Below are positions 1,762 to 61,916 of a stretch of 64,000 bases of DNA, piece after piece. The first letter of the stretch is position 1, and every line of letters starts with the position of its first letter. The stretch comes from Macrostomum lignano (taxonomy: Eukaryota): contig NIVC01001902.1 in NCBI GenBank assembly GCA_002269645.1, forward strand, positions 1-64,000, given 5' to 3'. A program made the translations under genes and the position numbers. The notes under the pieces were generated by a model. The model was not told the origin of the DNA, ran no database searches, and saw only the letters and a list, made by a program, of their open reading frames with translations.

Positions 1762-12736
<10,975 letters not shown>

Positions 12737-12747
12737 AGTGAAATTCT

Positions 12748-13645
12748 GACGATGAGATAGAATCCGATGAGATATAATCTGATGAGATATAATCTGATGA
12801 GATAGAATCTGATGAGATAGAATCTGATGAGATATAATCGGATGAGATAGAATCTGATGAGATATAATCGGATGAGATAGAATCTGATGAGATAGAATCC
12901 GATGAGATAGAATCTGATTAGATAGAATCCGATGAGATAGAATCTGATGAGATAGAATCTGATGAGATAGAATCTGATGAGATAGAATCCGATGAGATAG
13001 AATCCGATGAGATAGAATCTGATGAGATAGAATCCGATGAGATAGAATCTGATTAGATAGAATCCGATGAGATAGAATCTGATGAGATAGAATCCGATGA
13101 GATAGAATCTGATGAGATAGAATCCGATGAGATAGAATCTGATGAGATAGAATCTGATGAGATAGAATCTGATGAGATAGAATCCGATGAGATAGAATCC
13201 GATGAGATAGAATCTGATGAGATAGAATCTGATGAGATAGAATCCGATGAGATAGAATCTGATGAGATAGAATCCGATGAGATAGAATCTGATGAGATAG
13301 AATCTGATGAGATAGAATCCGATGAGATAGAATCTGATTAGATAGAATCCGATGAGATAGAATCTGATTAGATAGAATCCGATGAGATAGAATCTGATGA
13401 GATAGAATCCGATGAGATAGAATCTGATTAGATAGAATCCGATGAGATAGAATCTGATGAGATAGAATCCGATGAGATAGAATCTGATGAGATAGAATCC
13501 GATGAGATAGAATCTGATGAGATAGAATCTGATGAGATAGAATCTGATGAGATAGAATCCGATGAGATAGAATCCGATGAGATAGAATCTGATGAGATAG
13601 AATCTGATGAGATAGAATCCGATGAGATAGAATCCGTTGACAGAA
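12748..13645. repeat. 15-bp minisatellite (GATGAGATAGAATCY) starting just after the ACK stop codon
   Basis: About 60 units. Confidence 0.95.
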
Positions 13646-14299
13646 TCTCACAGACTGATAAATATGTAAGGATTATATGTGTGAAATATGTAATAGCGTT
13701 AGATATGCTTTTATTTCTCTCGCCCGCATTTGCTGATCAAAAATAGATTTGCAACTCTGCTTTCACAAGCGCCTATGTTCTTGCAATTGCGTGCGTGTGG
13801 GGTGGCGGTGCGTTCTCCAGCTTGCTAGCTGTCGTGGAGGACAAACTTTTACTCGTTATATTGTTGTCCGTTGGTTAATTATCAAACGGCATTTGTTGCA
13901 TATATTACTACTACTACTTGGCTATTATCAGTAGTCTGCATGAACGATGCAAGTGTAAAATGATAATTGCATGAAATTTTGCAACCCCCGCTATACAAAA
14001 TGCTGCTTTTATTACCTTCGTATTGAAACCTGTTTTTGCCTGGTGTTAAATGGGTCAGTCATTATCAACTATATGATATCTATTACTTAATTGCTACGAT
14101 TGTGCTTCTAATGACCAGATATCCAGATTAATTGCCAGAATACGCACCTGCTATGACCTAAATGGTAAAATGGTAAAAAATGTTAAATGGTAAAATTAAT
14201 AAACTGTGTAACGGAGTGGACCAGACTAAACTTTCCCATTCTCCACACTGAATACGGCTTTTTAACACTGCTGTTTCGTGCATTTTTTCGTGCATCTTC

Positions 14300-15620
14300 C
14301 CAACCCAGAAGAATCGTCCCCCCCCCCAACCCAGAAGAATCGCCCCCCCCCCAACCCATGAGAATCGCCCCCCCCCCAACCCAGAAGAATTGCCCCCCAC
14401 CCAACCCATGAGAATCACCCCCCAACCCAGAAGAATTGCCCCCACCCAACCCATGAGAATCGCCCCCCCCAACCCATGAGAATCGCCCCCCCAACCCAGA
14501 AGAATTGCCCCCACCCAACCCATGAGAATCGCCCCCCCCAACCCAGAAGAATTGCCCCCCACCCAACCCATGAGAATCGCCCCCCCCCAACCCATGAGAA
14601 TCGCCCCCCCCCAACCCAGAAGAATTGCCCCCACCCAACCCATGAGAATCGCCCCCCCCCCAACCCAGAAGAATTGCCCCCCACCCAACCCATGAGAATC
14701 GCCCCCCCCAACCCAGAAGAATTGCCCCCACCCAACCCATGAGAATCGCCCCCCCCAACCCAGAAGAATTGCCCCCCACCCAACCCATGAGAATCGCCTC
14801 CAACCCAGGAGAATCGCCCCCAACCCCAACCCAGGAGAATCGCCCCCAACCCCAACCCAGGAGAATCGCCCCCAACCCCAACCCAGGAGAATCGCCCCCA
14901 ACCCAGGAAAATCGCCTTCAACCCAGGAAAATCGCCTTCAACCCAGGAAAATCGCCTTCAACCCTGGAGAATCGCCCCCAACCCCAACCCAGGAGAATCG
15001 CCCCCCCAACCCCAACCCAGAAGAATCGCTCCCAAGCCAGGAGAATTGCCTTCAACCCAGGAGAATCGCCCCCAACCCAGGAGAATCGCCCCCCCCCCAA
15101 CCCCAACCCAGAAGAATCGCTCCCAAGCCAGGAGAATCGACCCAAGCCAGGAGAATCGCTCCCAAGCCAGGAGAATCGCCCCCCAACCCAGGAGAATCGC
15201 CCCAACCCAGGAGAATCGCCCCCAACCCCAACCCAGGAGAATCGCCCCCCAACCCCAACCCAGAAGAATCGCTCCCAAGCCAGGAGAATCGCCCCAAGCC
15301 AGGAGAATCGCCTTCAACCCAGGAGAATCGCCCCCCAACCCCAACCCAGAAGAATCGCTCCCAAGCCAGGAGAATCGCCCTCAAGCCAGGAGAATCGCCT
15401 TCAACCCAGGAGAATCGCCCCCCAACCCAAACCCAGAAGAATCGCTCCCAAGCCAGGAGAATCGCCTTCAACCCAGGAGAATCGCCCCCCCAACCCAGGA
15501 GAATCGCCCCCAACCCCAACCCAGAAGAATCGCTCCCAACCCAGAAGAATCGCACCCAAGCCAGGAGAATCGCCCCCAAGCCAGGAGAATTGCCCCCGAG
15601 AATCGCCCCCAACCCAGAAT
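14300..15620. repeat. ~20-bp C-rich minisatellite (CCAACCCAGGAGAATCGCC)
   Basis: Direct inspection. Confidence 0.92.
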
Positions 15621-15671
15621 TAATAATCTCCGCAGCCCATAAAATGGCGCCCACCCCATCGCAGCCCGAGC

Positions 15672-17910
15672 ATGACAACCGACTTAGCCAACAAGCCGGT
15701 CCAATTAAACGGCACTTCAAAAGACGCCGCTGATAAAACATCAAAGGATGCCGCCGCTGTCCCAGAAAATAAAGCTAATAATTGCGATGAGGCGCAGCAG
15801 CAGGAGGCTGAGTTCTACACTGATGCGGAGCGCTACTGGGCCACCGTGGAGGCCACCGAGGCTGGCATGATGGGCGGCAACGACAGCCTCGATGAGATCG
15901 AAATCTCTTCATCACGGATGTTCCTGACCAGAGCTGCCGAGCTGGCCGGGCTGAGGCAGCTCAACCGGGCTCTGGATTGCGGCTCCGGCATCGGCCGGGT
16001 TACCAAGAAGCTCCTGCTGCCGATGTTTGCCACGGTTGACATGGCCGAGGTGACGAGCCACTTCCTGGCCAAGTCCAGGGAGTACATTGGGGAGCCAGAT
16101 GCCTCCCGGGTGGGCGACAGTTCTACTGCGGCCTGCAGGTGAATGGGATGGCCGGGTTTTGATGGGAAGATTTGGGATTTTTTATGATTTGGGATTCTTG
16201 ATGAGGAAGATTTGGGATTTTTTATGGGAAGATTTGGGATTTTTGATGGCGAATATTTGGGATTTTTGATGGCGAAGATTTGGGATTTTTATGGGTAAAG
16301 ATTTTTATGGGGATGGTTTGGGATTTTTTTTGGGAAAGATGTGGGATTTTTTGGCGAAGATTTGGGATTTATTATGGCGAAGATTTGGGATTTTTGATGG
16401 GGAAGATTTGGGATTTTTATGGGGATGGTTTGGGATTTTTTATGGGGAAGATTTGGGATTTTTGGCGAAGATTTGGGATTTATTATGGCGAAGATTCGGG
16501 ATTTTTATGGGGATGATTTGGGATTTTTTATGGGGAAGATTTGGGATTTTTTATGGGGAAGATTTGAGATTTTTGATGGCGAAGATTTGGGATTTTTGAT
16601 GGCGAATATTTGGGATTTTTTATGGGGAATATTTGGGATTTTTTATGGGGAATATTTAGGATTTTTGATGGCGAAGATTTGGGATTTTTGATGGCGAAGA
16701 TTTGGGATTTTTTATGGGGAATATTTGGAATTTTTTATGGGGAATATTTGGGATTTTTGATGGCGAAGATTTGGGATTATGATGAGGAAGATTTGGGATT
16801 TTTGATGGGGAATATTTGGGATTTTTTATGGGGAATATTTGGGATTTTTTATGGGAATATTTGGGATTTTTTATGGGGAATATTTGGGATTTTTTATGGG
16901 GAATATTTGGGATTTTTGATGGCGAAGATTTGGGATTTTTGATGGCGAAGATTTGGGATTTTTTATGGGGAATATTTGGGATTTTTGATGGCGAAGATTT
17001 GGGATTATGATGAGGAAGATTTGGGATTTTTGATGGGAAGATTTGGGATTTTTGATGGGGAATATTTGATTTGTTTATGTCGAGGATTTGGGATTTTTAT
17101 GAGATTTTTTAGATTTTTTGATAGTGGAGATTAAAGATTTTTCCATAAGGAAAATTTGGGATTTTTTATGGAAATATTTGGGATTTTTTATGGAAATAAT
17201 TGGGATTTTTATATCCTGGCAAATTAGAAATGTTTCGATGGAGATGATTTGAGATTTTTGATTGCGAGATTATAAAATTTTTGTTGAGAAGATTTTGGGT
17301 TTATGTACGAGTGAGTAAAAGATTGAACTCGTCGATGGGAAGTAAGATCGTGGGATATTTGGTGGAATTTCTAAAGAGCGGCTATTAGAAACTTTGATGA
17401 TGGTTGAAGGTTAGGTTTGAATATACATATATCAACCAGTCACTTGATAATTTCGAAGATTTCCTAATTTATAAACGCAAAATTATTTTATTGCTACTCT
17501 TAGTAGAGTAAATTGAAAATGCATTGAACGAAATAAATTAAACTCTATTAATTAATTACCCGCAGGACCTGACATTCCCAGCCGAGACCCGCTACGACCT
17601 GGTCTGGGTTCAGTGGGTCATCGGCCATCTGCGCGACGCTCATCTGGTGGACTTTCTGCGCCGAGCCGCCGCCTCGCTCAGCCCCTGCGGCATGATCGGC
17701 GTCAAGGACAATGTCATCACCGCCCGGGACGACTCCGAGTACGACTTTGACGAGCAGGACAGCAGCGTCTGCCGGCCGCGGCGCTCCCTGCTGAACCTGT
17801 TCAACCAGGCCGGCCTGATCGTCCTGCTGGAGGAGACTCAGGAGGGCTTCCCGGATGCCCTGTACCCGGTGCTGTCCTTCGCTCTGGTGCCCAAGGGCCG
17901 CTGCGTTTGA
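15672..17910 (+). CDS. NTMT1: N-terminal Xaa-Pro-Lys methyltransferase (NTMT1/METTL11A-like); exons 15672-16138 and 17566-17910; apparent 1-bp deletion at ~16118-16120
   Basis: FYTDAERYW, GMMGG, ALDCGSGIGRVTKKLLLP, VWVQWVIGHL, IGVKDNV, DEQDSSVCR. The expected FYCGLQ|D is present one base out of frame just before the GT donor at 16139; acceptor CGCAG at 17561-17565. Confidence 0.92.
16160..17240. repeat. ~22-bp G/T-rich minisatellite in the NTMT1 intron (GAAGATTTGGGATTTTT)
   Basis: Direct inspection. Confidence 0.9.
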
Positions 17911-18400
17911 CACTGTTTGAGTGTCAGACTGTTTGAGTGTCAGACTGTATGAGTGTCAGACTGTTTGAGTGTCAGACTGTTTGAGTGTCAGACTGTATGA
18001 GTGTCAGACTGTTTGAGTGTCAGACTGTTTGAGTGTCAGACTGTTTGAGTGGCAGACTGCTTGAGTGTCAGACTGTTTGAGTGTCAGACTGTTTGAGTGT
18101 CAGACTGTTTGAGTGTCAGACTGTATGAGTGTCAGACTGTTTGAGTGTCAGACTGTTTGAGTGTCAGACTGTTTGAGTGGCAGACTGCTTGAGTGTCAGA
18201 CTGTTTGAGTGTCAGACTGAGTCTCAGACGACTGTTTAAGTGTCAGACTGAGTGTCAGACTGTTTTAAGTGTCAGACTGCTTTTAAGTGTCAGACTGTTT
18301 TCAGGTGTCAGACTGAGCGTCAGACTGAGTGTCAGACTGTTTTTAAGCGTCAGACTGAGTGTCAGACTGTTTTTAAGCGTCAGACTGCCTCAGTGTCTGT
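17910..18400. repeat. 16-bp minisatellite (CAGACTGTTTGAGTGT) directly after the NTMT1 stop
   Basis: Direct inspection. Confidence 0.92.
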
Positions 18401-18737
18401 CTGTCTGTCTGTCTTTATCTATCCCTGTTTATCTGTTCTATATTTGTTCTCCTAAATATACTCGTATAAATGCGCTGCCTGTTACAAGCTCATCTTGTTC
18501 CTTGATTGCTTACCTTAATGTAAGTTTTTATGTAATGCATTTCGTTCTGTTTGCGCTGTCGTTTTAGCGCTGAAGGCAGTGACTTTGTTTACGCAACTTC
18601 CTCTCTTAGTTTTTGTTTGTTACTTCTTTCTGATCTCTATAACGTATTTATCAGAGGAGCCCATAAATTATTAAAGAATTCCCTATTATAACTTGCCGCA
18701 AGCCTTCATGCAGTAACAACCTCTTTAAGGATCGCCA

Positions 18738-18920
18738 CCCACCAATCACAAACCATTCCAAAACTACAAACCAATCAGAAACCATCCTATAAACCGCCAA
18801 CCAATCAGAAACCATCCTATAAACCGCCAGCAAATCAGAAACCGTCAACCAATCAAAAACCGTCCTGAGAAGCGCCAAACAATCAGAAACCTCCCTTTAG
18901 ACCGCCAACCAATCAAAAAC
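18738..18920 (+). promoter_or_regulatory. Array of CCAAT-box-like motifs (AACCAATCAGAA), ~30-40 bp spacing, upstream of the PCS-like ATG
   Basis: Five to seven exact or near-exact copies 60-240 bp upstream of ATG 18980; function inferred only. Confidence 0.4.
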
Positions 18921-18979
18921 AATCTACCTGGTAAAATTTGTCATCCAATCGGCAGCCACTTGAGAAAATCTCTCATTGC

Positions 18980-19963
18980 ATGTCATCCGACCGCTTGCTG
19001 GTGACCTTTCTGGACAGCGACGAAGGCCGACGCCGCCTCTTGGAAGCGTCGCCAATTCGTCCTGCCACGGTTGAAGGATTCTGCAAGAAGCTGCGCTGCG
19101 CCAGCTGCGGCATGGCCTCGATTTCGCTGGTGATGCGGGCGCAGACTGGGGATCAGGTGACCTATGCTGAAGACTTCATCTACGACAGGTTTGTTTGTAC
19201 GAAAAATGCAGATAACCGGACGTAATCAAACTGCAGATAACCGGAAGTAATAAAAATGTAGATAACCGGAAGTAATCAAAAATGCAGATAACCAGAAGTA
19301 ATCAAACTAGATTACCGGAAGTAATCAAACTGTAGATTACCGGAAGTAATCAAACTGCAGATAACTGGAAGTAATAAAAATGTAGATAACCGGAAGTAAT
19401 AAAAAAAGTAGATAACCGGAAGTAATAAAAATGTAGATAACTGGAAGTAATAAAAATGTAGATAACTGGAAGTAATAAAAATGTAGATAACTGGAAGTAA
19501 TAAAAATGTAGATAACCGGTAGTAATAAAAAAGTAGATAACCGGAAGTTAATCAAATCTCAATTCCCAGACTCTCCGACATCAAACCACTGTCTGATTTG
19601 GATCAGCGCGGCATGACAGCCGACGATGTGGCCGCCTGCCTGCTGCGTCTCGGCGCCGCCGCCTCGGTGCGGCGTCCTGGCAGCGCCGACGAGCTCCGCG
19701 ATCTGGCTCTGACTCGCCTGGCTCAAGAGTCATCGTCTATCATTGCCAATTTCCATCTGAAAAGCTTGGGCTTTCCCTCCGAATGGGGTCACCTGTCCCC
19801 TGTGGCAGCCTACCATCGCGACTCAGACAGTGTGCTCATAATGGACAATGACCCCAAGCCTAACGACCCCTTCTGGGTCACCATGCAGGACCTCTACGAA
19901 TCGATGCGGCCAGCGGACCCGGAATCTGGACTGCCCAGAGGACTCATTTTGGCGGAGTTTTAA
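18980..19963 (+). CDS. Single-domain phytochelatin-synthase-like papain-fold enzyme, 200 aa; exons 18980-19188 and 19570-19963
   Basis: GT-AG phase-2 intron joins a 603-nt ORF. Motifs SDEG..LL, C43-GMAS, GMT-DD, G-H144-LSPVAAY, LIM-D162, WV...DLY-SM...D..SG..RG match the PCS catalytic domain; His-Asp spacing of 18 as in AtPCS1/NsPCS. Confidence 0.85.
19205..19555. repeat. ~25-bp minisatellite (TAGATAACCGGAAGTAATAAAAATG) filling the PCS-like intron
   Basis: About 14 units. Confidence 0.92.
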
Positions 19964-20309
19964 CCAAAGTCTACCGATATGTTGTGTAGTTAATTTTATG
20001 AACGTTTTATGACTATTGTGCCTGTCTACATATTTCAATAGGAAGCCTTTTACTTGTCTTAAAGTATAATGCAGTCGAACTTATACTTTGAAAAAATATA
20101 AAACGCACATTTTCTACTTTAAGTAGCTTCATGAATTTGTATATTAAGCGAATGTCGACATTACCGAAAAACAAACTGGCTTTTGTTTGATTGACAGCTC
20201 AGATTCCGAAATTTCTTCATTATCGACACAGATGAAAGCCAGAAGTGCTGACTGTATATGCGCCATGTGCTCATGGCGAGATTTGAAACTGGTGATATAA
20301 TATATGGGT

Positions 20310-21760
20310 GAGATTCGGAACCAATTATCTCATGTGTGAGATTTGGAACTAATTATCTCATCTCATGGGTGATATTCGGAATCAATCATCTCATGGGTGA
20401 TATTCGGAACCAAATCATCTCATAGGTGATATTCGGAACCAATCATCTCATCTCATGGGTGATATTCGGAACCAAATCATCTCATAGGTGATATTCGGAA
20501 CCAATCATCTCATCTCATGGGTGATATTCGGAACCAAATCATCTCATAGGTGATATTCGGAACCAATCATCTCATGGGTGAGATTCGGAACCAATTATCT
20601 CATCTCATGGGTGATATTCGGAACCAATCATCTCATCTCATGGGTGATATTCGGAACCAAATCATCTCATCTCATGGGTGATATTCGGAACCAAATCATC
20701 TCATAGGTGATATTCGGAACCAATCATCTCATCTCATGGGTGATATTCGGAACCAAATCATCTCATAGGTGATATTCGGAACCAATCATCTCATGGGTGA
20801 GATTCGGAACCAATTATCTCATCTCATGGGTGAGATTCGGAACCAATTATCTCATCTCATGGGTGATATTCGGAACCAAATCATCTCATAGGTGATATTC
20901 GGAACCAAATCATCTCATAGGTGAGATTCGGAACCAATTATCTCATCTCATGGGTGATATTCGGAACCAATCATCTCATCTCATGGGTGATATTCGGAAC
21001 CAAATCATCTCATAGGTGATATTCGGAACCAATCATCTCATGGGTGAGATTCGGAACCAATTATCTCATCTCATGGGTGATATTCGGAACCAATCATCTC
21101 ATCTCATGGGTGATATTCGGAACCAAATCATCTCATCTCATGGGTGATATTCGGAACCAAATCATCTCATAGGTGATATTCGGAACCAATCATCTCATCT
21201 CATGGGTGATATTCGGAACCAAATCATCTCATAGGTGATATTCGGAACCAATCATCTCATGGGTGAGATTCGGAACCAATTATCTCATCTCATGGGTGAG
21301 ATTCGGAACCAATTATCTCATCTCATGGGTGATATTCGGAACCAAATCATCTCATAGGTGATATTCGGAACCAAATCATCTCATAGGTGAGATTCGGAAC
21401 CAATTATCTCATCTCATGGGTGATATTCGGAACCAATCATCTCATCTCATGGGTGATATTCGGAACCAAATCATCTCATCTCATGGGTGATATTCGGAAC
21501 CAAATCATCTCATAGGTGATATTCGGAACCAATCATCTCATCTCATGGGTGATATTCGGAACCAAATCATCTCATGGGTGAGATTCGGAACCAATTATCT
21601 CATCTCATGGGTGAGATTCGGAACCAATTATCTCATCTCATGGGTGATATTCGGAACCAAATCATCTCATAGGTGATATTCGGAACCAAATCATCTCATA
21701 GGTGACATTCGGAACTAATTATATTAAATCATCTCATCACATAGGTGACATTCGGAAATA
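20310..21760. repeat. 28-33 bp minisatellite (GGTGATATTCGGAACCAATCATCTCAT)
   Basis: Direct inspection. Confidence 0.93.
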
Positions 21761-22010
21761 ATTATCTCATCTCGTGGAATTTCATCCGTGGCAGTCGTAC
21801 AGTTGGATTGCGAACAGCTATAAATTGGATTTCAAAGTCCGTTCATCCTCTTGCTATTGGTGCCAACACCCGATTGGCTGATCGAACCCCGTTCCGGTGC
21901 GGAAACTTACAAACTTCCCATCTCCGAGCTTCTTCAATAAGTCGGCAGTTCCCCAGCTATTCTGTTGAAATTTTTCATTTGAATTTGTCGTCGCCCACTC
22001 GTTCGACGAA

Positions 22011-23198
22011 ATGTCGAAATCAAGCAAGTCGCTGAGTGCCAAGGCGAAGCAGCAGCAGCAGCAGCAGCAGGAGGACCGCGGCTCCACCTCCACGGGCACC
22101 GAGGATGACGAAGGAGAGGATGGCAATGAAGGTCGCCGTCAGAAGTCTGAGTCCCGCAAGCGGCTGCAGCGGTCGTTCTCGCTGGTTCCGGAGCGACTTG
22201 CCGTCGGCGGCAAAGGAGGCGGCGGCAGCGGCGGCGGGCTGTTCAGGAAGTCCGCCAGCCGGATGCAGCTGTGCGAGGCCGTCCTGCAGGTGCTCATTGT
22301 TGGCCTGGTGGTGGCAACCTTCCCGTTCTCGCTGCTGCTGTGCCTGAAGGTGGTGGCCCAGTACGAGCGGGCGGTGATCTTCCGTCTGGGCCGGATCCGC
22401 AGCTCCGAGGCCAGCGGGCCCGGCATGATCTTCCTGCTGCCCGGCATCGACTCCATGAAGCTGGTGGACCTGCGCACCATGACATTCGACGTGCCCACCC
22501 AGGAGGTGCTGACTAAAGACTCTGTGACCGTGGCGGTTGAGGCCGTGGTGTACTACAGGATCTTCGACCCGGTCATGTCGGTTGTCAACGTCGAGGACTG
22601 CAGCCGCTCCACGAAGCTGCTCGCCCAGACAACACTGCGCAACGTCCTTGGCACGGCCAGTCTCTACCAGCTGCTGGCCGGCCGGGACGAATCCACCCTG
22701 CTGATGCAGGAGACTCTGGACGCCGCCACCGACACATGGGGCGTCAAGGTGGAGCGAGTGGAGATCAAGGATGTCCGCCTGCCGACTCAGCTGCAGCGGG
22801 CGATGGCCGCCGAGGCGGAGGCGGCCCGCGAGGCCCGGGCGAAGGTGATCGCGGCCGAGGGCGAGCAGAAGGCCAGCAAAGCGTTGAAGGCGGCCGCCAT
22901 CGAGCTGTCCGAGTGCGGAGTCGCCCTGCAGCTGCGCTACCTGCAGACTCTGTGCAGCATCTCGGCTGAGAAGAACTCAACAATCATCTTCCCGCTGCCC
23001 ATCGAGATGCTGCAGATGTTCCAGACCGAGCAGCAGCAGCCGCCGCCGCAGTCCACCGATGATTCTGACGCCACGGCACCGACTTCCTGTGCCAGGCCGG
23101 TGATCACCACCAGCCGAAAGTCGACGACGCATCCGCAGACCCAGCAGCAGATGGGAGCTGCTTCCGGTGCGAACAGCAGCTTGGAGTCCGGCTGCTGA
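22011..23198 (+). CDS. Stomatin/MEC-2-like SPFH (band 7) membrane protein, 395 aa, intronless
   Basis: Hydrophobic hairpin with TFPFS, [127 protein letters not shown]. Confidence 0.95.
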   Translation: [395 protein letters not shown]

Positions 23199-23822: not shown

Positions 23823-24147
23823 TTTCTTTCTTAATTCTCATATGCAACTGCGCTCTAATAATAATCTATATTTATAGCAAAAGGAAATATAATTAACCGC
23901 TTGGCAATGCAAACTGTTTAAGATTGACATGTACTTTATTCAAATCCTTCAACCGTGCTTTTAGCTGGGTCACGAATTTCATATCGTTCACCTATTAATT
24001 AATCAATCAATCAATCAACAATAATGAATTTCCACCACTCAGAGATCAGTTGCTGCTCGGCTGTCCCCCACCGTCTGCTTAAGAAGCAGGCAGGGAAAAA
24101 ACTTTAAGATAAAATCTTGATTGAAATTTTTATAATCCGCGTCTGCT

Positions 24148-26725
24148 CTGACTGTCACTCTCCCGCTCACTGTCACTCTCCCGCTCACCGTCACTCTCCC
24201 GCTCACTGTCACTCTCCCGCTCACTGTCACTCTCCCGCTCACTGTCACTCTCCCGCTCACCGTCACTCTCCCGCTCACTGTCACTCTCCCGCTCACTGTC
24301 ACTCTCCCGCTCACCGTCACTCTCCCGCTCACTGTCACTCTCCCGCTCACCGTCACTCTCCCGCTCACTGTCACTCTCCCGCTCACTGTCACTCTCCCGC
24401 TCACTGTCACTCTCCCGCTCACTGTCACTCTCCCGCTCACTGTCACTCTCCCGCTCACTGTCACTCTCCCGCTCACTGTCACTCTCCCGCTCACTGTCAC
24501 TCTCCGCTCACTGTCACTCTCCCGCTCACCGTCACTCTCCCGCTCACTGTCACTCTCCCGCTCACTGTCACTCTCCCGCTCACTGTCACTCTCCCGCTCA
24601 CTGTCACTCTCCCGCTCACTGTCACTCTCCCGCTCACTGTCACTCTCCCGCTCACTGTCACTCTCCCGCTCACTGTCACTCTCCCGCTCACTGTCACTCT
24701 CCCGCTCACTGTCACTCTCCCGCTCACTGTCACTCTCCCGCTCACTGTCACTCTCCCGCTCACTGTCACTCTCCCGCTCACTGTCACTCTCCCGCTCACT
24801 GTCACTCTCCCGCTCACTGTCACTCTCCCGCTCACTGTCACTCTCCCGCTCACTGTCACTCTCCCGCTCACCGTCACTCTCTACTCACTGTCATTCTCTA
24901 CTCACTCATTCTCTACTCACTCTCCCGCTCACTCTCCCGCTCACTGTCACTCTCCCGCTCACTGTCACTCTCCCGCTCACTGTCACTCTCCCGCTCACTG
25001 TCACTCTCCCGCTCACTGTCACTCTCCCGCTCACTGTCACTCTCCCGCTCACTGTCACTCTCCCGCTCACTGTCACTCTCCCGCTCACTGTCACTCTCCC
25101 GCTCACTGTCACTCTCCCGCTCACCGTCACTCTCTACTCACTGTCATTCTCTACTCACTCATTCTCTACTCACTCATTCTCTACTCACTGTCACTCTCTA
25201 CTCACTGTCACTCTCTACTCACTGTCACTCTCCCGCTCACCGTCACTCTCCCGCTCACTGTCCCTCTCCCGCTCACTGTCACTCTCCCGCTCACTGTCAC
25301 TCTCCCGCTCACTGTCACTCTCCCGCTCACTGTCACTCTCCCGCTCACTGTCACTCTCCCGCTCACTGTCACTCTCCCGCTCACTGTCACTCTCCCGCTC
25401 ACCGTCACTCTCCCGCTCACTGTCACTCTCCCGCTCACTGTCACTCTCCCGCTCACTGTCACTCTCCCGCTCACTGTCACTCTCCCGCTCACTGTCACTC
25501 TCCCGCTCACTGTCACTCTCCGCTCACTGTCACTCTCCCGCTCACTGTCACTCTCCCGCTCACCGTCACTCTCCCGCTCACTGTCACTCTCCCGCTCACT
25601 GTCACTCTCCCGCTCACTGTCACTCTCCCGCTCACTGTCACTCTCCCGCTCACTGTCACTCTCCCGCTCACTGTCACTCTCCCGCTCACTGTCACTCTCC
25701 CGCTCACTGTCACTCTCCCGCTCACTGTCACTCTCCCGCTCACTGTCACTCTCCCGCTCACCGTCACTCTCTACTCACTGTCATTCTCTACTCACTCATT
25801 CTCTACTCACTAATTCTCTACTCACTGTCACTCTCTACTCACTGTCACTCTCTACTCACTGTCACTCTCCCGCTCACCGTCACTCTCCCGCTCACTGTCA
25901 CTCTCCCGCTCACCGTCACTCTCTACTCACTCATTCTCTACTCACTGTCACTCTCTACTCACTGTCACTCTCCCGCTCACTGTCACTCTCTACTCACTGT
26001 CACTCTCTACTCACTGTCACTCTCCCGCTCACTGTCACTCTCTACTCACTGTCACTCTCTACTCACTGTCACTCTCCCGCTCACTGTCACTCTCTACTCA
26101 CTGTCACTCTCTACTCACTGTCACTCTCTACTCACTGTCACTCTCTACTCACTGTCACTCTCTACTCACTGTCACTCTCTACTCACTGTCACTCTCTACT
26201 CACTGTCACTCTCTACTCACTGTCACTCCACGCACTGTCACTCCACTCACTGTCACTCCACTCACTGTCACTCCACTCACTGTCACTCCACTCACTGTCA
26301 CTCCACTCACTGTCACTCCACTCACTGTCACTCCACTCACTGTCACTCTCTACTCACTGTCACTCCACTCACTGTCACTCCACTCACTGTCACTCCACTC
26401 ACTGTCACTCCACTCACTGTCACTCCACTCACTGTCACTCCACTCACTGTCACTCCACTCACTGTCACTCTCTACTCACTGTCACTCTCTACTCACTGTC
26501 ACTCTCTACTCACTGTCACTCTCTACTCACTGTCACTCTCTACTCACTGTCACTCTCTACTCACTGTCACTCTCTACTCACTGTCACTCCACGCACTGTC
26601 ACTCCACTCACTGTCACTCCACTCACTGTCACTCCACTCACTGTCACTCCACTCACTGTCACTCCACTCACTGTCACTCCACTCACTGTCACTCCACTCA
26701 CTGTCACTCCACTCACTGTCACTCT
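24148..26725. repeat. 18-bp minisatellite (CTGTCACTCTCCCGCTCA) grading into 15-17 bp variants
   Basis: More than 100 units; source of the spurious 915-aa ORF. Confidence 0.95.
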
Positions 26726-27659
26726 CTGTACTCACTATCGCTGCTCAGTTACTGTCACTCCTAACTTACAGGAACCTCTCATCTTACCTTTGATACTTCT
26801 GTACCCTAATTCTATGACTCCACTAAGAAAAATGCGTCAGTTCTCTCAAACTGCTCGTTACTGAGCGAATTTTCCTCAACTCCCACAGGATCCCCCCAGT
26901 CAACAAAAATCTGTCGCCTTGAGATTGGCGGGAGAAAAGGGGATTTTTACGATCGCCTCAATCCTCGATCGCCTCGGTCAATTTTCCAGCTAGAGAGGAG
27001 AGGAGGCGTGAAAATCGTTGAAAAAAGGCACTTGCTCTTTTTCTGTCTAAGTGGCGTTTTTTATTTCCTTCCACCTCTGCTCAAAGCTGCTCAGTCCGGC
27101 CACTCACAGCCCCTTAGAATTATTTATGACAACCTGCAACGAGGAGTTGGGAGGGGATGAGGCGCCCTGAGACTGGCACGGTGTGGCAAGGCCAAGCCTG
27201 ACATTTGCGGGCGGCCCGATGATGGAGGAACTTGAAGTCTGCGCAATCATATGGATGCTGGGGGCTGGATGCGTACAGTTGAGTTAAGAGTTAATCTCTC
27301 AGGCTAATCTCACACTCCTGGCGATTGTGTGTGTGCGCTCTGACACAGCTCAAGTTAATGCCAGTCTGTGGAGCAGTATTGTGGAGAATCAGTCAATTGA
27401 GTGACTATACTCAAACACTCACATACAGACTGGGATTGCTGATAAAGCTGATTATATAGGTAGTTACAGTTCCGCTTGGGCTTGAGAAAATTCAACAAAA
27501 CCGCTGTAGTATTTAAAAACTCGATAAAATGTTCGATTTAAAGTAATAGCTAAACCGATGGTCTTAATGTCTAACAGGAAAGTTAAGAATCGATTCTCTT
27601 TCTTAGAAAGCGACAGTTAAAAATCTGGTTTCTTTCTTAGACACAAGTACGAGCGTAAT

Positions 27660-37427: not shown

Positions 37428-37909
37428 ACACTTACGGTGGACTGACTTTCCTGCATTTCCAATCGTCAGACATGTACTGTCTCTGTGCCTTGGAGGTTGG
37501 CCCTCAAGGCGTCATGGTTTTAAACATAGGCAGCTGAAGTGGAAGGAAGCTAAACTCGACTTTCTTAGAAATGAGCTGAAGCCCTGCGGGGAACGTATGT
37601 TTTCAATGGCCGGCTTTGCCTTAAACGAAGTTGGTATAAAATAATCCTCTCTAATTCGTACGCTCAATTTTACTAAGTGGAATCCATTAGCAATCAATTT
37701 TAAAGCTAAAAATTCAAAAAATTTAAATCCCCTCTGAGTCCTCTCCCCTCATCCGCTTGAGCCGCTCATTGTTGCTAGGCAATGAGCCAGGTAAATAGAA
37801 TTTCACTCCCCAGTGTTTTAAGGCATCGCAGCGGATTGCAGAGCCTCCCAGAACATCATCACACGAAGTAAAAGCTGCGGACTCAAAGCCAACTGCTACC
37901 AACGGCACA

Positions 37910-38912
37910 ATGCTCTCTCTGCTCATCATCTGGATTGTCATGGCAGCGGCTGCCACGGCTGAGAAGTCCTGCTGGAGTCTCCAGCGAGGCGACCTCGCCG
38001 AGTACCGGGTGCTGGCGGTGAAGCTGGCGGTCAACGACATTCACTGCGTGACTTCTGCTGAGAACGCGGAAGCCGTCCGCTTCGACGCGGCCTCGGGCTC
38101 CTGCTCGCTGCTGGCGTGCGATCGGGGAGCGATGGACGCCTGCAGGAAGTGCCGGCACGCCAGCGACTCCAGCCTGCCTCAGCTGTGGGTGAGTGAGCTG
38201 GGCTTTGCTTTGCGGCTTCTGCACTTTGCAGAAAGCAGAGCATCAATATGCGTGCACGAAATGCAGCACCGCATCAATATGCGTGCACGAAATGCAGCAC
38301 CGCATCAATATGCGTGCACAAAATGCAGCACCGCATCGCCCATTGCAGATGAGGAAGCCGGTGAAGTGCTGGACGACCTTCCAGCACAGAGTCGACGGCT
38401 CCATCAGCTTCAACCGGAACTGGGCGGACTACGCGAGCGGATTCGGTCAGGGCGAGAGTCTCAACTACTGGATGGGACTGGAGCAGCTCCACCAGCTCAC
38501 CGCCACTGGAGTGTGGAGAGTCCGCTGGGAGTTCAGCGACTGGAACGGCACCTGGTACTGGGCTGAGAATGCTCCGTTCTCTGTTGGTCCAGCGAGCGAC
38601 AAGTACAGGTGCTCGATGGGACCTCTGGACGCGAGCAGGTCGAGTGTCGGACAGCGGACTGAAGCGAACTTCTCGCCGAACAACTGGCAGTTCAGCACTC
38701 CGGACTCCGACAACGACAACTGGAGCGGTGGCAGCTGCGCACAGGAAAGGCAGGCTGGGTGGTGGTACGGCTGGTGTGCATTCATTGACCCGAACGCAGT
38801 CTACAAAGAGTACCCCAACACACAGGGGCTTTACTATTACCTTAAAGGCTCGGCTAGCAATCTGATCATTCTTTACTCGATGAAGACTTTTGAGTGTCTG
38901 ATTTTTAATTGA
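37910..38912 (+). CDS. Secreted fibrinogen-related (FBG/FReD) protein copy A, 280 aa; exons 37910-38188 and 38349-38912
   Basis: Signal peptide, Cys-containing N-terminal domain (PAN/apple-like, tentative), FBG motifs WTTFQHRVDGSISFNRNWADYASGFG, YWMGLEQLHQLT, FSTPDSDND, GWWYGWC; phase-0 GT-AG intron. Confidence 0.88.
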
Positions 38913-39199
38913 GTTGCTTAGAATTACATTTCAAGGTTTGTAATATTGCGTCATTTTTTACCAGCCATACGAACTTTTAGCGTCACACTCTAAGTTTTTA
39001 GCAGTGTGCACAGCATGAAAATTGGCTGTTTTTCCCTTATAGTCATCGTGCAGTTTCTCTGAAACAACAGAGAACGCTCTATTGTGTAACGTGTAATTAC
39101 CTAAGCTTTTTTCGTAGAGCCGTTCCAATGCGGAGAATTTTAACCCAATGCAGTACTTTTTGTGCTATCGTAAGTAATACAGAAAAATACCCTTCCCCG

Positions 39200-41750
39200 A
39201 TTCTTAAAATCACATTTATTCGCAAGCAGCAATCAAATGCTACTTTGACTTACTTGACTTAGCTGCAGGGGGGCTCCGTGCATCCGGATGCAGCGAGGAG
39301 GCGTTGCTGCCCATTTCGCTAACCCCTGGTGACCACGGGCAGCTGTTGCTGCGGTGGCGCGCAGGGAGATCCGGTGGTGACGGTTTCCGCAGCGCGGTCC
39401 CCCTTTGGGGAGTCCAGGAGTTGTAATGTCGCTCGCCCGGTAGTTCTTGGTAGCGGACGAGCTGGTAGAGATGATTCTCGGGCCTGAAAATGTGGGAGAG
39501 GTCCGGGTTTGGGCCGAGGTAGGTGAGCCTTTCCTGAGTAAAGGCGGGGCATTCACAGATGAAATGCTCCGTATTCTAGACAGCGGAGAGGCAGAATGGA
39601 CATTCCTCGCTGAGGATTTTTCCCTGGAGGTGACGATGCCTGGCAAAACAGCCATGACTCGAGAGGCCATGGTCACCGCCCTGATGTCCTTGCGGTTGAG
39701 TCCAAGCAGGGCCTTGCGCAGGGCGGAGGAAGGACAGGGGACAGCCCATCTCTCCTTGTGCTTTGAGGCCTGCATCCACTGGTTGATCCGATTGGTGACA
39801 ACGGCGCTGGGGGGGGGGGACCACGGGCAGGGGACCACTAAAAGAACCGGTCGAGCCAGCCTTGGCCAGGCGATCGGCCAATTCGTTGCCGGGTGGCCCG
39901 GGGATCCACCTTAGGGATCACCTTGTTGTAGTGTACTTCAGTGCGATGCACAATATTAGTCACGCGTTGCAATGTATTACGTAAGACGCATGCGCACGCA
40001 AGAACTTCGATCTGGAAGACGGTGGAGCAGGTGTCGGTGCGCTGGGAGAAGGTCGCCACGGTTCTCCCTCCAGACACGATGCAGTAGCCGTAGCCAGAGG
40101 CGGAGTTGATTCGGGATCCGTCAGTGAAGCAGTGGATTTCACAGTTGTCCCTCGCTTCATGACGTGGTGGAATGCTGGTTTTGAATTTGAGCGGAGGGCA
40201 GAGCGTGGATGGGATTCCGTCCGAGAGGGTCAGCAGGCCTCCCGCTGCTTCCAGCTCTCGCAGGCTGAGGTCGCCGTGCGGGCGGAGGCTCCGCTTTCTG
40301 AAAGCGAACTGCTTCTTGATTAGGACACCCGCGTCAAGCAGACGGCGGGTGGTCTTCATTGCCTCGCCTCTGACAAAGGGGTCAAGGGGGGCTGTCTAGG
40401 GAGTTCATGCCAGCAAAGGGCGTAGAGGGAGTCGCGCTCATGATAGCTCGACAAGCGCATCGTGCACCCTGTTAAGAGCCTCAAGAAACCCTTTCACCTC
40501 TAGGGCACTGTTCCAGATGAAGCCGGCGAATGAGATGGCTAACAATGGCTAACAATGGTAGTGTAAATCCACCAGAGGCGGCGGGGGTGAGCCCCAGGTA
40601 GCGCCGAAAGCTCTGCAGATCTGCGCGAGAGTCGCGAGAGCTTTGCGGGCTTTGGTTTGGGTGTATGGAGTCCAGCTCAACCTGTGGTCGAGGGTGACGC
40701 CAAGACATCTGGTTTGTTTCTCCATGGCAACGGGTTTGGAATTGAGGGAAGCGGTTCGATCCTCCAGTTTCGGCGGCTGGTGAACATGATAGCCACGGAA
40801 GAGGCAACCGCACCAGGAGCTTCGGCGGCACCTGACGCTTCCGAAGTTCTGACCGGCGCGCGGGGTCCGCTCCCTTGTCGGATGTCGGCTCCTCCGCGGG
40901 ATTCGCAGAGTTACCGGCACCCTCCTCAGAGGCAGCAGAAGAGGCGGCTTTCGCACTCCTCCGTTCCTCCGCTTTGCGCTGGAGAAAGGCTTTGTAGCGA
41001 GCAATGCTACGGGCCTTCTTTTTAGAGGTCTGAGGTCCGCTGTCCTGTTGTTTAGCCACTTCGGCAGTGTCCTGAGTGGCGGCAGGGGCTGACTGGGAGT
41101 CATCGGAGGTTCCGGTGTTTCGAATGTCCTGCTGGGCCGCGGTACCAACCTCGGTTGGCGCTCCAGCAGCTTTGAATACTCCATGAGTCGCTGAAAGGCG
41201 GATGGGGACTAGAGGTGAGAAGCTGCTGGGCCGTAACCCCAAACCCAACAGCCAGCCAAAAGATAGCGACCGGGGAGTGGCTTAAGCCCTTACCGGCCCG
41301 ACCGCTAGCAACCGAGAAACTCCCCGGCTAAGAGCCCGGCTTGGAAAAACCAGAGGCCGAATCAAAGGACCATCAGCGCGGTACTACACTGGGCCCTTGA
41401 GGGAAGCAGGAGGACTGCCTCCGGAGCCTGCGGACTGGCCGCATACCCTGTTAAGGTCAGAGGGTGGTACCTGTTCCTCAGAGCCGTGGCCAGAGGTACC
41501 TGAGACGCACAGGTGCACTAAGGAGCGGAGCCCGTACCCAAAGCGGCCAAGCCAAGGCCACGGATGGGCTGCCGCCGCCGGAGCTCAGTCAATCCAGCAG
41601 CCCTAGAACTGCCTTGAACACATGCGGGAGGTCAACCCCTGGGTCGGCTTGTGAGTCAGCTTGGAGAGAGTTCTCCTGCCATTCCTGCACCAGAATAGAG
41701 GGGGTGCAGGTGTATAGGATCGCAGACCTTAGCTCGTAGGCCTGGTCTGA
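39200..41750 (-). mobile_element. Degenerate, internally deleted non-LTR retrotransposon with RNase H (I/R1/LOA-like); boundaries approximate
   Basis: RT C-terminal segment (RCLGVTLDHRLSW..TKARKA..WG), RNase H (CFTDGS..GYG..STVFQIEVLA; ADRLAKAG), Cys/His knuckle remnant (CPFC), AATAAA at 39215-39220; several frameshifts. Confidence 0.78.
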
Positions 41751-44808: not shown

Positions 44809-45459
44809 GGGGGTCTTTCTCGAAAGCGACTTACGGTGTGCCATAGACGTAAGTTAGGGAGGAAGCACTTATGGTTTGCTCGAAAGGCTCGCAACTTGAC
44901 ACGAGGTACGATCAATCGCAACTTTACGAGCTCGTAACTTTACGCAAAAGACAGTTTCTCGAAAAGAGAGTAAGTCTATGGTCCTACTTAATATCGATCG
45001 TAAATCTGCGCCTGGTCGAGACCAAGCGTAAGTAGACATGAGCCCCCAACTTCATTCTCATCAGAGACTGGCGCAAGTTTAACTTTCCTAGTTTTAACCA
45101 AGGCTTTTTCTTTTTTACGAGTCACATAAAAAAGCTCTAAGAAGAATTTGACGAAGTCTTTGTCAAGTCTCAATCTTTTCCGCAAAAAATAAAACAGGTG
45201 CCCAATTCCTACTACTGTTAGGGGAAAATATAAAGCAAGAAATCCATAATACTAAAAATAGCATTTTAGATTCGATTTTTGCCTTCTCTCCCATAGACAA
45301 AATTTTATCGACCCAACTAGACTTACGAATTGCGTAAGTCACGCAAAGTCTAAGCGAGTTTTAAGAAACTGTCTTAGTATTGATCTTACGCAGAGCGTAA
45401 AGTTCTAACTTAAGATCGAACTTTCCATAGAACTTACGCAAATTTCGAGAAAGACCCCC
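44809..45459. mobile_element. Non-autonomous Harbinger-like element
   Basis: 17-bp perfect TIR GGGGGTCTTTCTCGAAA; CAG on both flanks (44806-44808, 45460-45462). Confidence 0.65.
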
Positions 45460-45462
45460 CAG

Positions 45463-61307: not shown

Positions 61308-61916
61308 TCACCTATTGCCGCCAAGCAGCTGTTGAACTTCATCTTCAACATCCTCCCTGGTGGCCGGCATCGCCGCCGCCGGCTGCTGCTGCCGCTCAGG
61401 CCAGTAGAGCCGTTGCGACGGCCTGTAGGAGTTGTAGATGCTGCTGCCGCCGGCGCCGCCTCCGGCCAGTCTGTGCCGAGGGCCCGGCTGGGTGCCGTAG
61501 TTGTAGGCGGAGTCCGTGGCCTCGTAGACCCCAGTGCCGTAGCTGTCCGCCTCCGACGGAGGCACCCGACGCTGCTGTTGAGGCTGCTGCCTGCCGTTGT
61601 TGTTGTTGTTGTTGTTGTTGTTATTGTTGAAGCTCCGTCGGAACTGCTGCTGCTGTTGTTGCTGTTGCTGCGGCACTGAAGGGAGGGTGCCGTTGCGCGA
61701 CTTCGGCATGAGGCCGCCCGTCAGGGTCAGCGAGCGCTGCATGACGTCATCGATGCTCTCGTAGGTCTGCTCGGACTCCGCCATAGACGGCTGCCGGCGG
61801 TGCCGACCCAGCATCGGCGGCTGCGGCTGGCGGGACCGCGGATCGTCTGCGGGTTGGAAGGGCCAGGTTGAAGGACTGGATGGATGGTGGGGACAGACAG
61901 AGACAGACAGACAGAC

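What the first reader, a model, noticed from the sequence alone, without database searches (positions are those of the whole stretch)
18980..19963. Minimal bacterial-style phytochelatin-synthase homolog with an intact triad but altered substrate pocket
Seen: a 200-aa protein consisting only of the PCS catalytic domain, with Cys43-His144-Asp162 and one spliceosomal intron. Established: eukaryotic PCSs (plants, C. elegans, Schistosoma) have a C-terminal extension, whereas cyanobacterial NsPCS is half-size. Manual alignment from memory suggests the oxyanion Gln six residues before the Cys is Lys, the glutathione-binding Arg of NYLRK is Leu (NFHLK), DV-R-KY is DNDPKPN, and the nucleophile sits in a CxxC (C40-A-S-C43). 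Inference: a divergent, possibly horizontally acquired and intronised papain-fold enzyme acting on something other than glutathione.
Basis: partly seen in the sequence, partly recalled or inferred. Interest (0 to 1): 0.7.

Follow-up and report, generated by a model that had tools for sequence, protein, structure and literature searches.

The report
Short divergent phytochelatin-synthase-like flatworm gene
This is an intact two-exon gene of the flatworm Macrostomum lignano for a 200-residue, catalytic-domain-only relative of phytochelatin synthase that keeps the Cys-His-Asp triad but has lost the residues needed to build phytochelatins, so it is more likely a small glutathione-type peptidase than a metal-detoxifying synthase.

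Summary
Exon 1 (18980-19188), a GT..AG intron (19189-19569) and exon 2 (19570-19963) give a 200-aa protein. It matches Pfam PF05023 at 81.5 bits. Its model superposes on Nostoc NsPCS (Alr0975) at TM 0.88. C43, H144 and D162 align with the NsPCS triad.

The organism is Macrostomum lignano. The gene lies between ordinary animal genes and has their base composition.

The protein is excluded from the canonical PCS clade of animals, plants and amoebae (100% bootstrap). It scores best against a little-noticed eukaryotic group of short, Arg173-less PCS-like proteins found in Saccoglossus, sea urchins, a crinoid and marine protists. That placement is weak because the branch is long.

Being half-size and lacking the acceptor pocket is therefore not unique to this gene, and recent bacterial transfer is not supported. 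Three things are unique:
- the Lys at the otherwise invariant oxyanion Gln;
- the CxxC;
- the intron, since three homologues in Saccoglossus, Diadema and Antedon have no intron in the coding sequence.

The likely function is hydrolysis of glutathione or its conjugates, not phytochelatin synthesis. This is inferred, not shown.

The parts
18741..18920 (+). Upstream 30-nt tandem repeat carrying five exact CCAATCA motifs, 60-240 nt before the ATG. It may be a promoter element; this is inferred only.
   Evidence: Tandem Repeats Finder; motif positions 18742, 18771, 18801, 18849, 18909.
18980..19188 (+). Exon 1: ATG to the first two bases of codon 70. It encodes the N-terminal helix and B-loop 1 with K36-K37-L-R-C40-A-S-C43.
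   Evidence: aligned to NsPCS residues 37-~95.
19088..19090 (+). Codon AAG = K37, at the position of the oxyanion-hole Gln (NsPCS Gln64, AtPCS1 Gln50, papain Gln19).
   Evidence: Gln in 25/25 short-group, 18/18 canonical, 6/6 HKN-type and 11 of the 12 NsPCS-like sequences that have a residue in this column. It is Lys only here and in the M. lignano paralogues.
19097..19108 (+). C40-A41-S42-C43: the catalytic nucleophile Cys43 sits as the second Cys of a CxxC.
   Evidence: Only one other of about 130 aligned domains has Cys at -3.
19189..19569 (+). Single spliceosomal intron (GT..AG, phase 2, 381 nt, 31% GC).
   Evidence: The same junction is present in UniRef P0001. It is absent from the Saccoglossus, Diadema and Antedon homologues.
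19202..19556 (+). 25-nt minisatellite (14 copies) that fills almost the whole intron.
   Evidence: 14 matches, found nowhere else in the window.
19570..19963 (+). Exon 2: last base of codon 70 to the TAA stop. It encodes the beta-sheet half with NFHLK (L133 at 19757-19759), H144 (19790-19792), D162 (19844-19846), the DNDPKPN loop, D186 (19916-19918) and R193 (19937-19939).

Best explanation
The locus is a functional-looking nuclear gene of Macrostomum lignano. It encodes a cytosolic, stand-alone papain-fold domain of the phytochelatin-synthase superfamily (Pfam PF05023; by my own knowledge, MEROPS C83). It is a long-branch member, or sister, of a eukaryotic group of 200-250-aa PCS-like proteins that have lost the acceptor (second-substrate) pocket.

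Proposed mechanism (inferred):
- Cys43, activated by His144 and Asp162, attacks the Cys-Gly bond of glutathione or a glutathione S-conjugate. The gamma-glutamyl end would be held by the invariant Asp186 and Arg193.
- Gly is released and a gamma-Glu-Cys thioester forms.
- Arg173, Gln178, Arg204, Lys206 and Tyr207 are all replaced, so no second glutathione can be positioned. The thioester is then resolved by water.
- The result is a deglycinase (peptidase), not a phytochelatin polymerase.

Lys37 in place of the oxyanion Gln probably lowers or changes catalysis. The C40xxC43 pair could lock the nucleophile in a disulfide as a redox switch.

Shown: gene structure, family, fold, triad, substitutions, relatives. 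Inferred: substrate, hydrolase outcome, and the roles of K37 and the CxxC.
For: - Gene model and family.
- Fold: the AlphaFold model has pLDDT 92.5, and Foldseek gives TM 0.87-0.89 to Alr0975, including its acyl-enzyme forms.
- Organism and paralogues.
- Genuine animal neighbours on the same strand: an NTMT1-type methyltransferase (PF05891) upstream and a stomatin (Band_7) downstream. The composition is the same as theirs.
- Profile scores of the query: short Arg-less group 144.5 bits, NsPCS-like bacterial 134.7, HKN-type bacterial 108.2, canonical 92.4. With group sizes equalised: 121+/-4, 109+/-4, 108, 88+/-5.
- Features shared with the short group: Lys63, His172, non-Arg173, Pro204 and one extra residue before Gly-His.
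- Named members of that group: Saccoglossus kowalevskii XP_002730372.1, Strongylocentrotus purpuratus XP_003730583.1, Diadema XP_071476120.1, Antedon XP_071964499.1, and MMETSP protist transcripts.
- Asp225 and Arg232 are invariant in all groups and in the query.
- Literature: Gln64, Arg173, Lys206 and Tyr207 line the second-substrate cavity. AtPCS1 R152A/K/H and K185A/R/H retain less than 1% activity, and Q50N none (PMC3855540).
- PCS enzymes also act as peptidases on glutathione conjugates (PMC3561135 and bioRxiv 10.1101/568113).
Against: - Placement in the short group is weak. In one NJ run the group plus the query was recovered as an exact clade in 22% of bootstraps; in the run with named taxa in 3%.
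- In one search the query's nearest neighbours were short-group only in 35% of replicates, mixed short-group and bacterial in 28%, bacterial only in 19% and HKN-type in 5%.
- Signature columns do not discriminate: 3/9 for the short group against 3/10 for HKN-type.
- The best single-domain hit is a probably bacterial HKN-type protein (P0008, 87 bits, against 75-76 for short-group members).
- The Asp201-Trp211 loop has the bacterial or canonical length, not the one-residue deletion of the short group.
- Gln64 is invariant elsewhere and AtPCS1 Q50N is dead, so the protein may be catalytically poor or inactive.
- No expression, activity or structural geometry data were available. Model coordinates could not be inspected.
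- The gamma-Glu-binding role of Asp225 and Arg232 is from my memory of Vivares et al. 2005 and was not verified in the library.
Confidence: 0.5

Rival explanations
1. The gene was transferred independently from a bacterium (an HKN-type or NsPCS-like donor) into the Macrostomum lineage. It then adopted host composition and gained an intron.
For: - The top single-domain hit is an HKN-type protein (P0008, 38% identity, 87 bits). The HKN type is bacterial by gene context (P0028 lies beside sigma-54, HisKA and GGDEF genes).
- Asn at position 207 and the Pro-Phe-Trp ending of the loop are shared with the HKN type, as is the loop length.
- No orthologue above 38% identity exists outside M. lignano in either protein search.
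- The intron is lineage-specific and made of a minisatellite.
Against: - The query scores higher against the eukaryotic short-group profile than against the HKN profile: 144.5 against 108.2 bits, or 121 against 108 with sizes equalised.
- The query grouped with HKN alone in only 5-12% of bootstraps.
- It shares Lys63, Pro204 and the insertion before Gly-His with the short group and not with HKN.
- It has no N-terminal signal or extension, unlike P0008 and P0013.
- Composition and GC3 equal those of the neighbours.
- The low identity means any transfer would be old.
Confidence: 0.15
2. It is a pseudoenzyme or a decaying paralogue. The fold is kept, but catalysis is lost because the oxyanion Gln is Lys and the pocket is remodelled. 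The protein would then bind rather than cleave a thiol peptide, or have no function.
For: - Gln64 is invariant in all other groups, and AtPCS1 Q50N is inactive (PMC3855540).
- The branch is very long.
- Several M. lignano database models of this gene are frameshifted or truncated (P0002, P0004, P0005).
Against: - The triad and 15 family-invariant positions, including G143-H144, S146-P147, Y151, W172, D186 and R193-G194, are all intact.
- The ORF is intact across two exons, and K37 and the CxxC are identical in the paralogue models P0001-P0003.
- The frameshifted models come from an error-prone early assembly (my own knowledge), so they are weak evidence of decay.
- A Lys ammonium group could still stabilise an oxyanion.
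Confidence: 0.2
3. It is a bona fide phytochelatin synthase, the flatworm's metal-detoxification enzyme, only shortened.
For: UniRef and NCBI pipelines name it and its relatives 'glutathione gamma-glutamylcysteinyltransferase'. NsPCS, also half-size, makes a little PC2 (PMC3855540).
Against: - It is excluded from the canonical clade in 100% of bootstraps.
- It lacks Gln64, Arg173, Gln178, Arg204, Lys206 and Tyr207, each essential in AtPCS1 mutagenesis.
Confidence: 0.04

Closest known systems
NsPCS / Alr0975 of Nostoc sp. PCC 7120, the 'primitive' half-size PCS-like glutathione hydrolase (PDB 2BTW, 2BU3, 6TH5, 6THO, 6TJL)
   Same: Single catalytic domain of similar size. Same fold (TM 0.87-0.89). 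Same Cys-His-Asp triad, and Asp225 and Arg232 are conserved. Its main activity is Gly removal from glutathione, which is the activity proposed here.
   Different: Only 24-25% identity. Gln64 is Lys, Arg173 is Leu, Gln178 is Phe, Arg204 is Pro, Lys206 is Pro and Tyr207 is Asn. There is a CxxC at the nucleophile. There is no N-terminal leader; the mature and full-length Alr0975 entries differ by about 30 residues. The gene is eukaryotic and has an intron.
Uncharacterised short PCS-like proteins of Ambulacraria and marine protists (Saccoglossus XP_002730372.1, S. purpuratus XP_003730583.1, Diadema XP_071476120.1, Antedon XP_071964499.1, MMETSP transcripts)
   Same: 200-250 aa with a single domain and no leader. 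Lys63, His172, Met or Leu instead of Arg173, Pro204, one extra residue before Gly-His, and no Lys206 or Tyr207. This group gives the best profile score for the query.
   Different: They keep Gln64 (25/25), mostly keep Gln178, have Trp203 and a one-residue deletion at 205, and have intronless coding sequences. Identity to the query is only 26-33%, and the grouping has weak bootstrap support.
Canonical eukaryotic phytochelatin synthases (AtPCS1, and by my own knowledge C. elegans PCS-1 and Schistosoma mansoni PCS; here represented by Hydra, Owenia, Mytilus, Haliotis and scallop sequences)
   Same: Same superfamily domain and triad.
   Different: They are 400-600 aa with a Cys-rich C-terminal domain, a strictly conserved Thr-Gln...Arg...Gln...Arg-Phe-Lys-Tyr pocket and a WRWF...DCC segment. 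They form a clade that excludes the query in 100% of bootstraps.
Half-size 'PCS-like' proteins of eukaryotic algae (diatoms, red algae, prasinophytes, extremophile green algae)
   Same: They are precedent that eukaryotes carry C-terminal-less PCS-like proteins, for some of which horizontal transfer has been proposed (PMC11314372).
   Different: Those described are NsPCS-like, defined by an Asn near the catalytic Cys. The paper says nothing about an Arg173-less type. No animal members are discussed there.

Membership tests
Phytochelatin synthase superfamily (Pfam PF05023; MEROPS C83 from my own knowledge; papain fold) | Sequence match above the curated threshold | tested here: met
   81.5 bits against a cutoff of 24.9, covering residues 31-194 of the protein and profile positions 38-209 of 210.
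Phytochelatin synthase superfamily (Pfam PF05023; MEROPS C83 from my own knowledge; papain fold) | Cys-His-Asp catalytic triad in register | tested here: met
   C43, H144 and D162 align with Cys70, His183 and Asp201 of NsPCS. These positions are invariant in all groups.
Phytochelatin synthase superfamily (Pfam PF05023; MEROPS C83 from my own knowledge; papain fold) | NsPCS-type three-dimensional fold | tested here: met
   Model pLDDT 92.5 and pTM 0.90. Foldseek top nine hits are all Alr0975, with TM 0.87-0.89 and E about 1e-16.
Phytochelatin synthase superfamily (Pfam PF05023; MEROPS C83 from my own knowledge; papain fold) | Oxyanion-hole Gln six residues before the nucleophile | tested here: not met
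   K37 (AAG). Gln is present in every short-group, canonical and HKN-type sequence compared, and in 11 of the 12 NsPCS-like ones with a residue in this column.
Canonical phytochelatin synthase (EC 2.3.2.15) | C-terminal Cys-rich domain (PF09328), total length of about 400-600 aa | tested here: not met
   Stop after residue 200. Only minisatellite sequence lies between 19964 and 22010.
Canonical phytochelatin synthase (EC 2.3.2.15) | Second-substrate cavity residues Arg152, Gln157, Arg183, Phe184, Lys185 and Tyr186 (AtPCS1 numbering) | tested here: not met
   The query has L133, F138, P165, K166, P167 and N168. The residues are essential in AtPCS1 (PMC3855540).
Canonical phytochelatin synthase (EC 2.3.2.15) | Groups with canonical plant, animal and amoebozoan PCSs in a tree | tested here: not met
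   The canonical clade is recovered without the query in 100/100 NJ bootstraps, and canonical animals are monophyletic in 94/100.
Canonical phytochelatin synthase (EC 2.3.2.15) | Metal-activated synthesis of (gamma-Glu-Cys)n-Gly | not testable with these tools
   Needs an enzyme assay.
Prokaryote-type half-size PCS-like (NsPCS-like) | Single domain with a conserved Gln64, Arg173, Lys206 and Tyr207 pocket | tested here: not met
   It is a single domain, but all four residues are replaced. The profile score is 134.7 bits, second to the short eukaryotic group.
Short Arg173-less eukaryotic PCS-like group (informal, delimited here) | 200-250 aa, no leader, Met or Leu at 173, Lys63, His172, Pro204, one extra residue before Gly-His | tested here: met
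   200 aa, L133, K36, H132, P165, and GFPSEWGH has the group's loop length.
Short Arg173-less eukaryotic PCS-like group (informal, delimited here) | Gln64, Trp203, deletion of residue 205, Thr207 | tested here: not met
   The query has K37, D164, K166 present (no deletion) and N168.
Short Arg173-less eukaryotic PCS-like group (informal, delimited here) | Phylogenetic grouping | tested here: inconclusive
   It gives the best profile score, and the query sits at the base of the group in the NJ point estimate. The exact clade is recovered in only 3-22% of bootstraps, and signature columns match 3/9 against 3/10 for the HKN type.

The most novel reading that the evidence does not exclude
The short Arg173-less proteins of ambulacrarians, marine protists and this flatworm form an unrecognised eukaryotic enzyme family derived from PCS. 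Under this reading the family no longer makes phytochelatins and instead processes a different thiol peptide or conjugate. The Macrostomum member would be a further innovation, with a Lys oxyanion residue and a CxxC redox or metal switch (C35, C40, C43) at the nucleophile. Its single intron would have been created recently by a minisatellite insertion into an ancestrally intronless gene.
Probability: 0.2. Interest if true: 0.6.

Novelty: new variant of a known kind. Interest (0 to 1): 0.4.

Why it matters
Phytochelatin synthases are the textbook route to metal-binding peptides. Their presence in animals is used to infer metal-handling capacity. Annotation pipelines label this gene and its sea-urchin and hemichordate relatives 'glutathione gamma-glutamylcysteinyltransferase'. 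Yet they lack the residues that mutagenesis shows are indispensable for synthesis.

Recognising a separate half-size, acceptor-pocket-less group in eukaryotes would correct those annotations. It would also point to an unstudied glutathione or conjugate peptidase in marine invertebrates.

M. lignano is a laboratory model flatworm in which gene knockdown is in use (PMC12732829, listed). By my own knowledge RNAi, in situ hybridisation and transgenesis are routine there. The function could therefore be tested directly.

On its own the gene is a modest curiosity, not a new kind of system.

Tried and rejected
1. A single-sequence AlphaFold run gave pLDDT 50 and was useless. It was replaced by a run with alignment A1.
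2. NCBIfam gave no hit.
I therefore obtained no transcript or paralogue DNA and could not compute dN/dS.
Whether any bacterium carries the Arg-less type was judged only from the contexts of a few members.
5. The third protein search was meant to reveal a canonical PCS in M. lignano. It listed only the best 120 of 2195 hits and none was from Macrostomum. Whether the worm also has a canonical PCS stays open.
6. The signature-column test did not discriminate between the short group and the HKN type.
7. Literature searches for Macrostomum PCS, or for animal half-size PCS-like proteins, found nothing.
8. Contamination was considered and rejected. The gene is flanked on one contig by animal genes, has an intron and has host composition.
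9. Retrocopy origin was considered and rejected. Only 8 nt upstream match the spliced leader, and the intron is present.

Full report
**1. What is in the sequence**

Between 18980 and 19963 on the + strand there is a two-exon gene.
- Exon 1 runs from an ATG at 18980 to 19188.
- A donor (CAG|GTTTGT) opens a 381-nt intron that closes with TTCCCAG| at 19569.
- Exon 2 runs from 19570 to a TAA at 19961-19963.

The spliced CDS is 603 nt, giving 200 aa. Without splicing the frame stops after 12 intron codons, and the His and Asp of the active site would be lost.

The intron has 31% GC against 60% in both exons. It consists almost entirely of 14 copies of a 25-nt minisatellite found nowhere else in the window.

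tblastn of the protein against the window finds only these two exons. The 2 kb between the stop and the next gene is a 33-nt satellite with no coding potential. There are therefore no hidden downstream exons.

**2. Family, fold and active site**

The protein matches Pfam PF05023 (Phytochelatin) at 81.5 bits, E 6e-23, against a cutoff of 24.9. The only solved structures it matches by sequence are the Nostoc Alr0975/NsPCS entries, at E about 5e-14.

An AlphaFold model built with 23 homologues has pLDDT 92.5. [quoted passage not shown] The next-best folds are other papain-like peptidases at TM 0.64 or lower.

The triad aligns as C43 = Cys70, H144 = His183 and D162 = Asp201.

| NsPCS residue | This protein |
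|---|---|
| Gln64 | K37 |
| Gln67 | C40 (giving C40-A-S-C43) |
| Tyr69 | S42 |
| Arg173 | L133 |
| Gln178 | F138 |
| Arg204 | P165 |
| Tyr205 | K166 |
| Lys206 | P167 |
| Tyr207 | N168 |

According to PMC3855540, Gln64, Arg173, Lys206 and Tyr207 (AtPCS1 Gln50, Arg152, Lys185, Tyr186) line the second-substrate cavity and are strictly conserved in PCSs. AtPCS1 R152A/K/H and K185A/R/H keep less than 1% activity. Q50N, the oxyanion residue, keeps none.

By contrast Asp225 and Arg232 (D186 and R193 here) are invariant in all groups I compared. My recollection of the NsPCS structure paper is that these two hold the gamma-glutamyl alpha-amino and alpha-carboxylate groups. I could not verify this in the library.

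**3. Organism and genomic setting**

A 98%-identical 202-aa UniRef protein, and three poorer models, all come from Macrostomum lignano.

The neighbours on the same strand are ordinary animal genes:
- an NTMT1-type N-terminal methyltransferase (exons 15672-16142 and about 17560-17910; PF05891);
- a stomatin (22011-23198; Band_7);
- further away, a tyrosine kinase, fibrinogen-domain genes and transposon remains.

Exon GC is 0.60 and GC3 is 0.70. This matches the neighbours, which have GC 0.59-0.65 and GC3 0.71-0.86. The gene is therefore resident in the flatworm genome and not a contaminant. It carries no compositional trace of recent transfer.

**4. Relatives**

An exhaustive HMMER search of 1.84 billion representative proteins gave 1692 hits at E<1e-3. 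Only M. lignano sequences exceeded 50% identity, and everything else was at most 38%.

Aligning the top 150 hits showed four recognisable types:
- canonical long PCSs (SYSR..GQTG.GHFSP...LDVARFKYPPHWV);
- NsPCS-like bacterial proteins;
- a bacterial 'HKN' type (NYHGRT...LDTAAHKNxPFW), in bacterial gene context;
- a set of 200-250-aa single-domain proteins with NYH(M/L)..LGQ, one extra residue before Gly-His, and D(T/V)W-P.T(E) in place of DVARFKY.

Named members of the last set are from Saccoglossus kowalevskii (two genes), Strongylocentrotus purpuratus, Diadema antillarum and D. setosum, Antedon mediterranea, and MMETSP protist transcriptomes. Unnamed members lie on eukaryote-like contigs, one of them next to an ABCE1 gene.

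The query scores 144.5 bits against a profile of this short group. It scores 134.7 against NsPCS-like, 108.2 against HKN and 92.4 against canonical. With group sizes equalised the scores are 121+/-4, 109+/-4, 108 and 88+/-5.

The query shares the group's Lys63, His172, non-Arg173, Pro204 and the insertion.

In NJ trees with named sequences, the canonical clade (Hydra, Owenia, molluscs, plants, amoebozoans, some cyanobacteria) is recovered without the query in 100/100 bootstraps. Canonical animals are monophyletic in 94/100.

The query sits at the base of the short group on a long branch, but that position is weakly supported:
- The exact clade was recovered in 22% of replicates in one run and 3% in the run with named taxa.
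- Its nearest neighbours in the named run were short-group only in 35% of replicates, mixed short-group and bacterial in 28%, bacterial in 19% and HKN in 5%.
- A signature-column count does not separate the short group (3/9) from HKN (3/10).
- The best single-domain hit is an HKN-type protein (87 bits).
- The 201-211 loop has the bacterial length.

I therefore treat the assignment as the best available, not as settled.

**5. What is and is not special**

Being half-size, eukaryotic and without the acceptor pocket is not special. Hemichordates, echinoderms and protists have such proteins, and half-size PCS-like proteins in algae are in the literature (PMC11314372).

Three things are special to the Macrostomum protein:
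- **Lys at the oxyanion position.** Gln is found in 25/25 short-group, 18/18 canonical and 6/6 HKN sequences. The Lys is present in the paralogue models too, so it is not a read error.
- **Cys at -3, making a CxxC with the nucleophile.** Together with C35 this puts three Cys within nine residues. Only one other of about 130 domains has Cys at -3.
- **An intron.** The Saccoglossus, Diadema and Antedon genes have uninterrupted coding sequences, as do the protist-type members examined. The Macrostomum intron is thus lineage-specific and was plausibly created around a minisatellite.

**6. Mechanism**

Shown: the fold, the triad and the conserved Asp186 and Arg193.

Inferred: Cys43 forms a thioester with a gamma-Glu-Cys-type acyl group after release of the C-terminal residue. 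With no acceptor pocket the thioester is hydrolysed. The enzyme would then be a deglycinase of glutathione or glutathione conjugates, as NsPCS mainly is and as PCSs are towards conjugates, rather than a phytochelatin polymerase.

K37 may weaken or retune transition-state stabilisation. C40-C43 may be a redox switch.

My estimates:
- about 0.7 that it is not a phytochelatin synthase;
- about 0.4 that it is a glutathione or conjugate peptidase;
- about 0.2 that it is catalytically dead.

**7. Origin**

Recent bacterial transfer is not supported, given the low identity to everything, the host composition and the host neighbours.

An old transfer, either of the whole short group into eukaryotes or separately into Macrostomum, cannot be excluded with these tools. 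The intronless state of the animal homologues keeps that door open.

Whether M. lignano also has a canonical PCS was not resolved.

**8. Verdict**

This is a new variant of a known kind. It is already present in databases under an automatic and probably misleading enzyme name, and it is uncharacterised in the literature I could search. Interest is moderate.

Noticed in passing
window 18972-18982: The 8 nt ending in the start codon (ATTGCATG) are identical to the 3' end of the M. lignano spliced leader (CGGTCTCTTACTGCGAAGACTCAATTTATTGCATG, PMC8629364). The paralogue models P0001 and P0002 begin 'HFQSSDRL' with no Met, as if their genomic sequence read ...CATTTTCAG|TCATCC. That would be a trans-splice acceptor with the AUG donated by the leader. 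Upstream of these 8 nt the window does not resemble the leader (4/19 matches).
   Followed up: partly
window 18741-18920: A 30-nt tandem repeat directly upstream of the gene carries five exact CCAATCA motifs plus variants. CCAAT followed by CA/G is, from my own knowledge, the NF-Y box consensus. This may be a repeat-borne promoter.
   Followed up: partly
window 15672-23198: Three same-strand genes lie in a row: NTMT1-type methyltransferase, PCS-like, stomatin. They are separated by 1.1 and 2.0 kb of satellite. UniRef model P0005 fuses a degraded PCS-like N-terminus to the stomatin of a paralogous locus. The gene order is therefore conserved between homeologous copies, and read-through or polycistronic transcription is possible.
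   Followed up: no
window 37646-38921 and 47291-48628: Two copies of a fibrinogen-C-domain gene (PF00147) are 98-99% identical and about 9.6 kb apart. Between them lie large ORFs I did not scan (39233-41248, read by eye as retroelement-like) and an ORF with a GIY-YIG domain (45361-46083; possibly Penelope-like, from my own knowledge).
   Followed up: partly
window 56384-57499 (+): A mariner/Mos1-type transposase (HTH_48 plus a partial DDE domain) is split over two frames, and is probably a decayed copy. A 798-aa ORF with DUF1258 lies at 51328-53724 (-).
   Followed up: partly
whole window, e.g. 1553-2910, 5133-7412, 7740-9346, 12470-13651, 14158-15744, 16157-17212, 20304-21719, 24039-26864, 61308-62972: The density of mini- and microsatellite arrays is extraordinary. 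They generate long spurious ORFs of up to 915 aa on both strands. Introns and intergenic spacers of the real genes are largely made of them.
   Followed up: no
L001 (Logan SRR29645014 contig, 1025 nt): Among the single-domain proteins of the short group, the one that scored highest against the query is P0010 (37% identity, NFHLKTFGYGPVWGH). The true start of its ORF is probably the upstream ATG at 257, giving MSDRIALESMEGKKLLEE. That resembles the query's MSSDRLLVTFLDSDEGRRRLLE. The source organism is unknown.
   Followed up: partly
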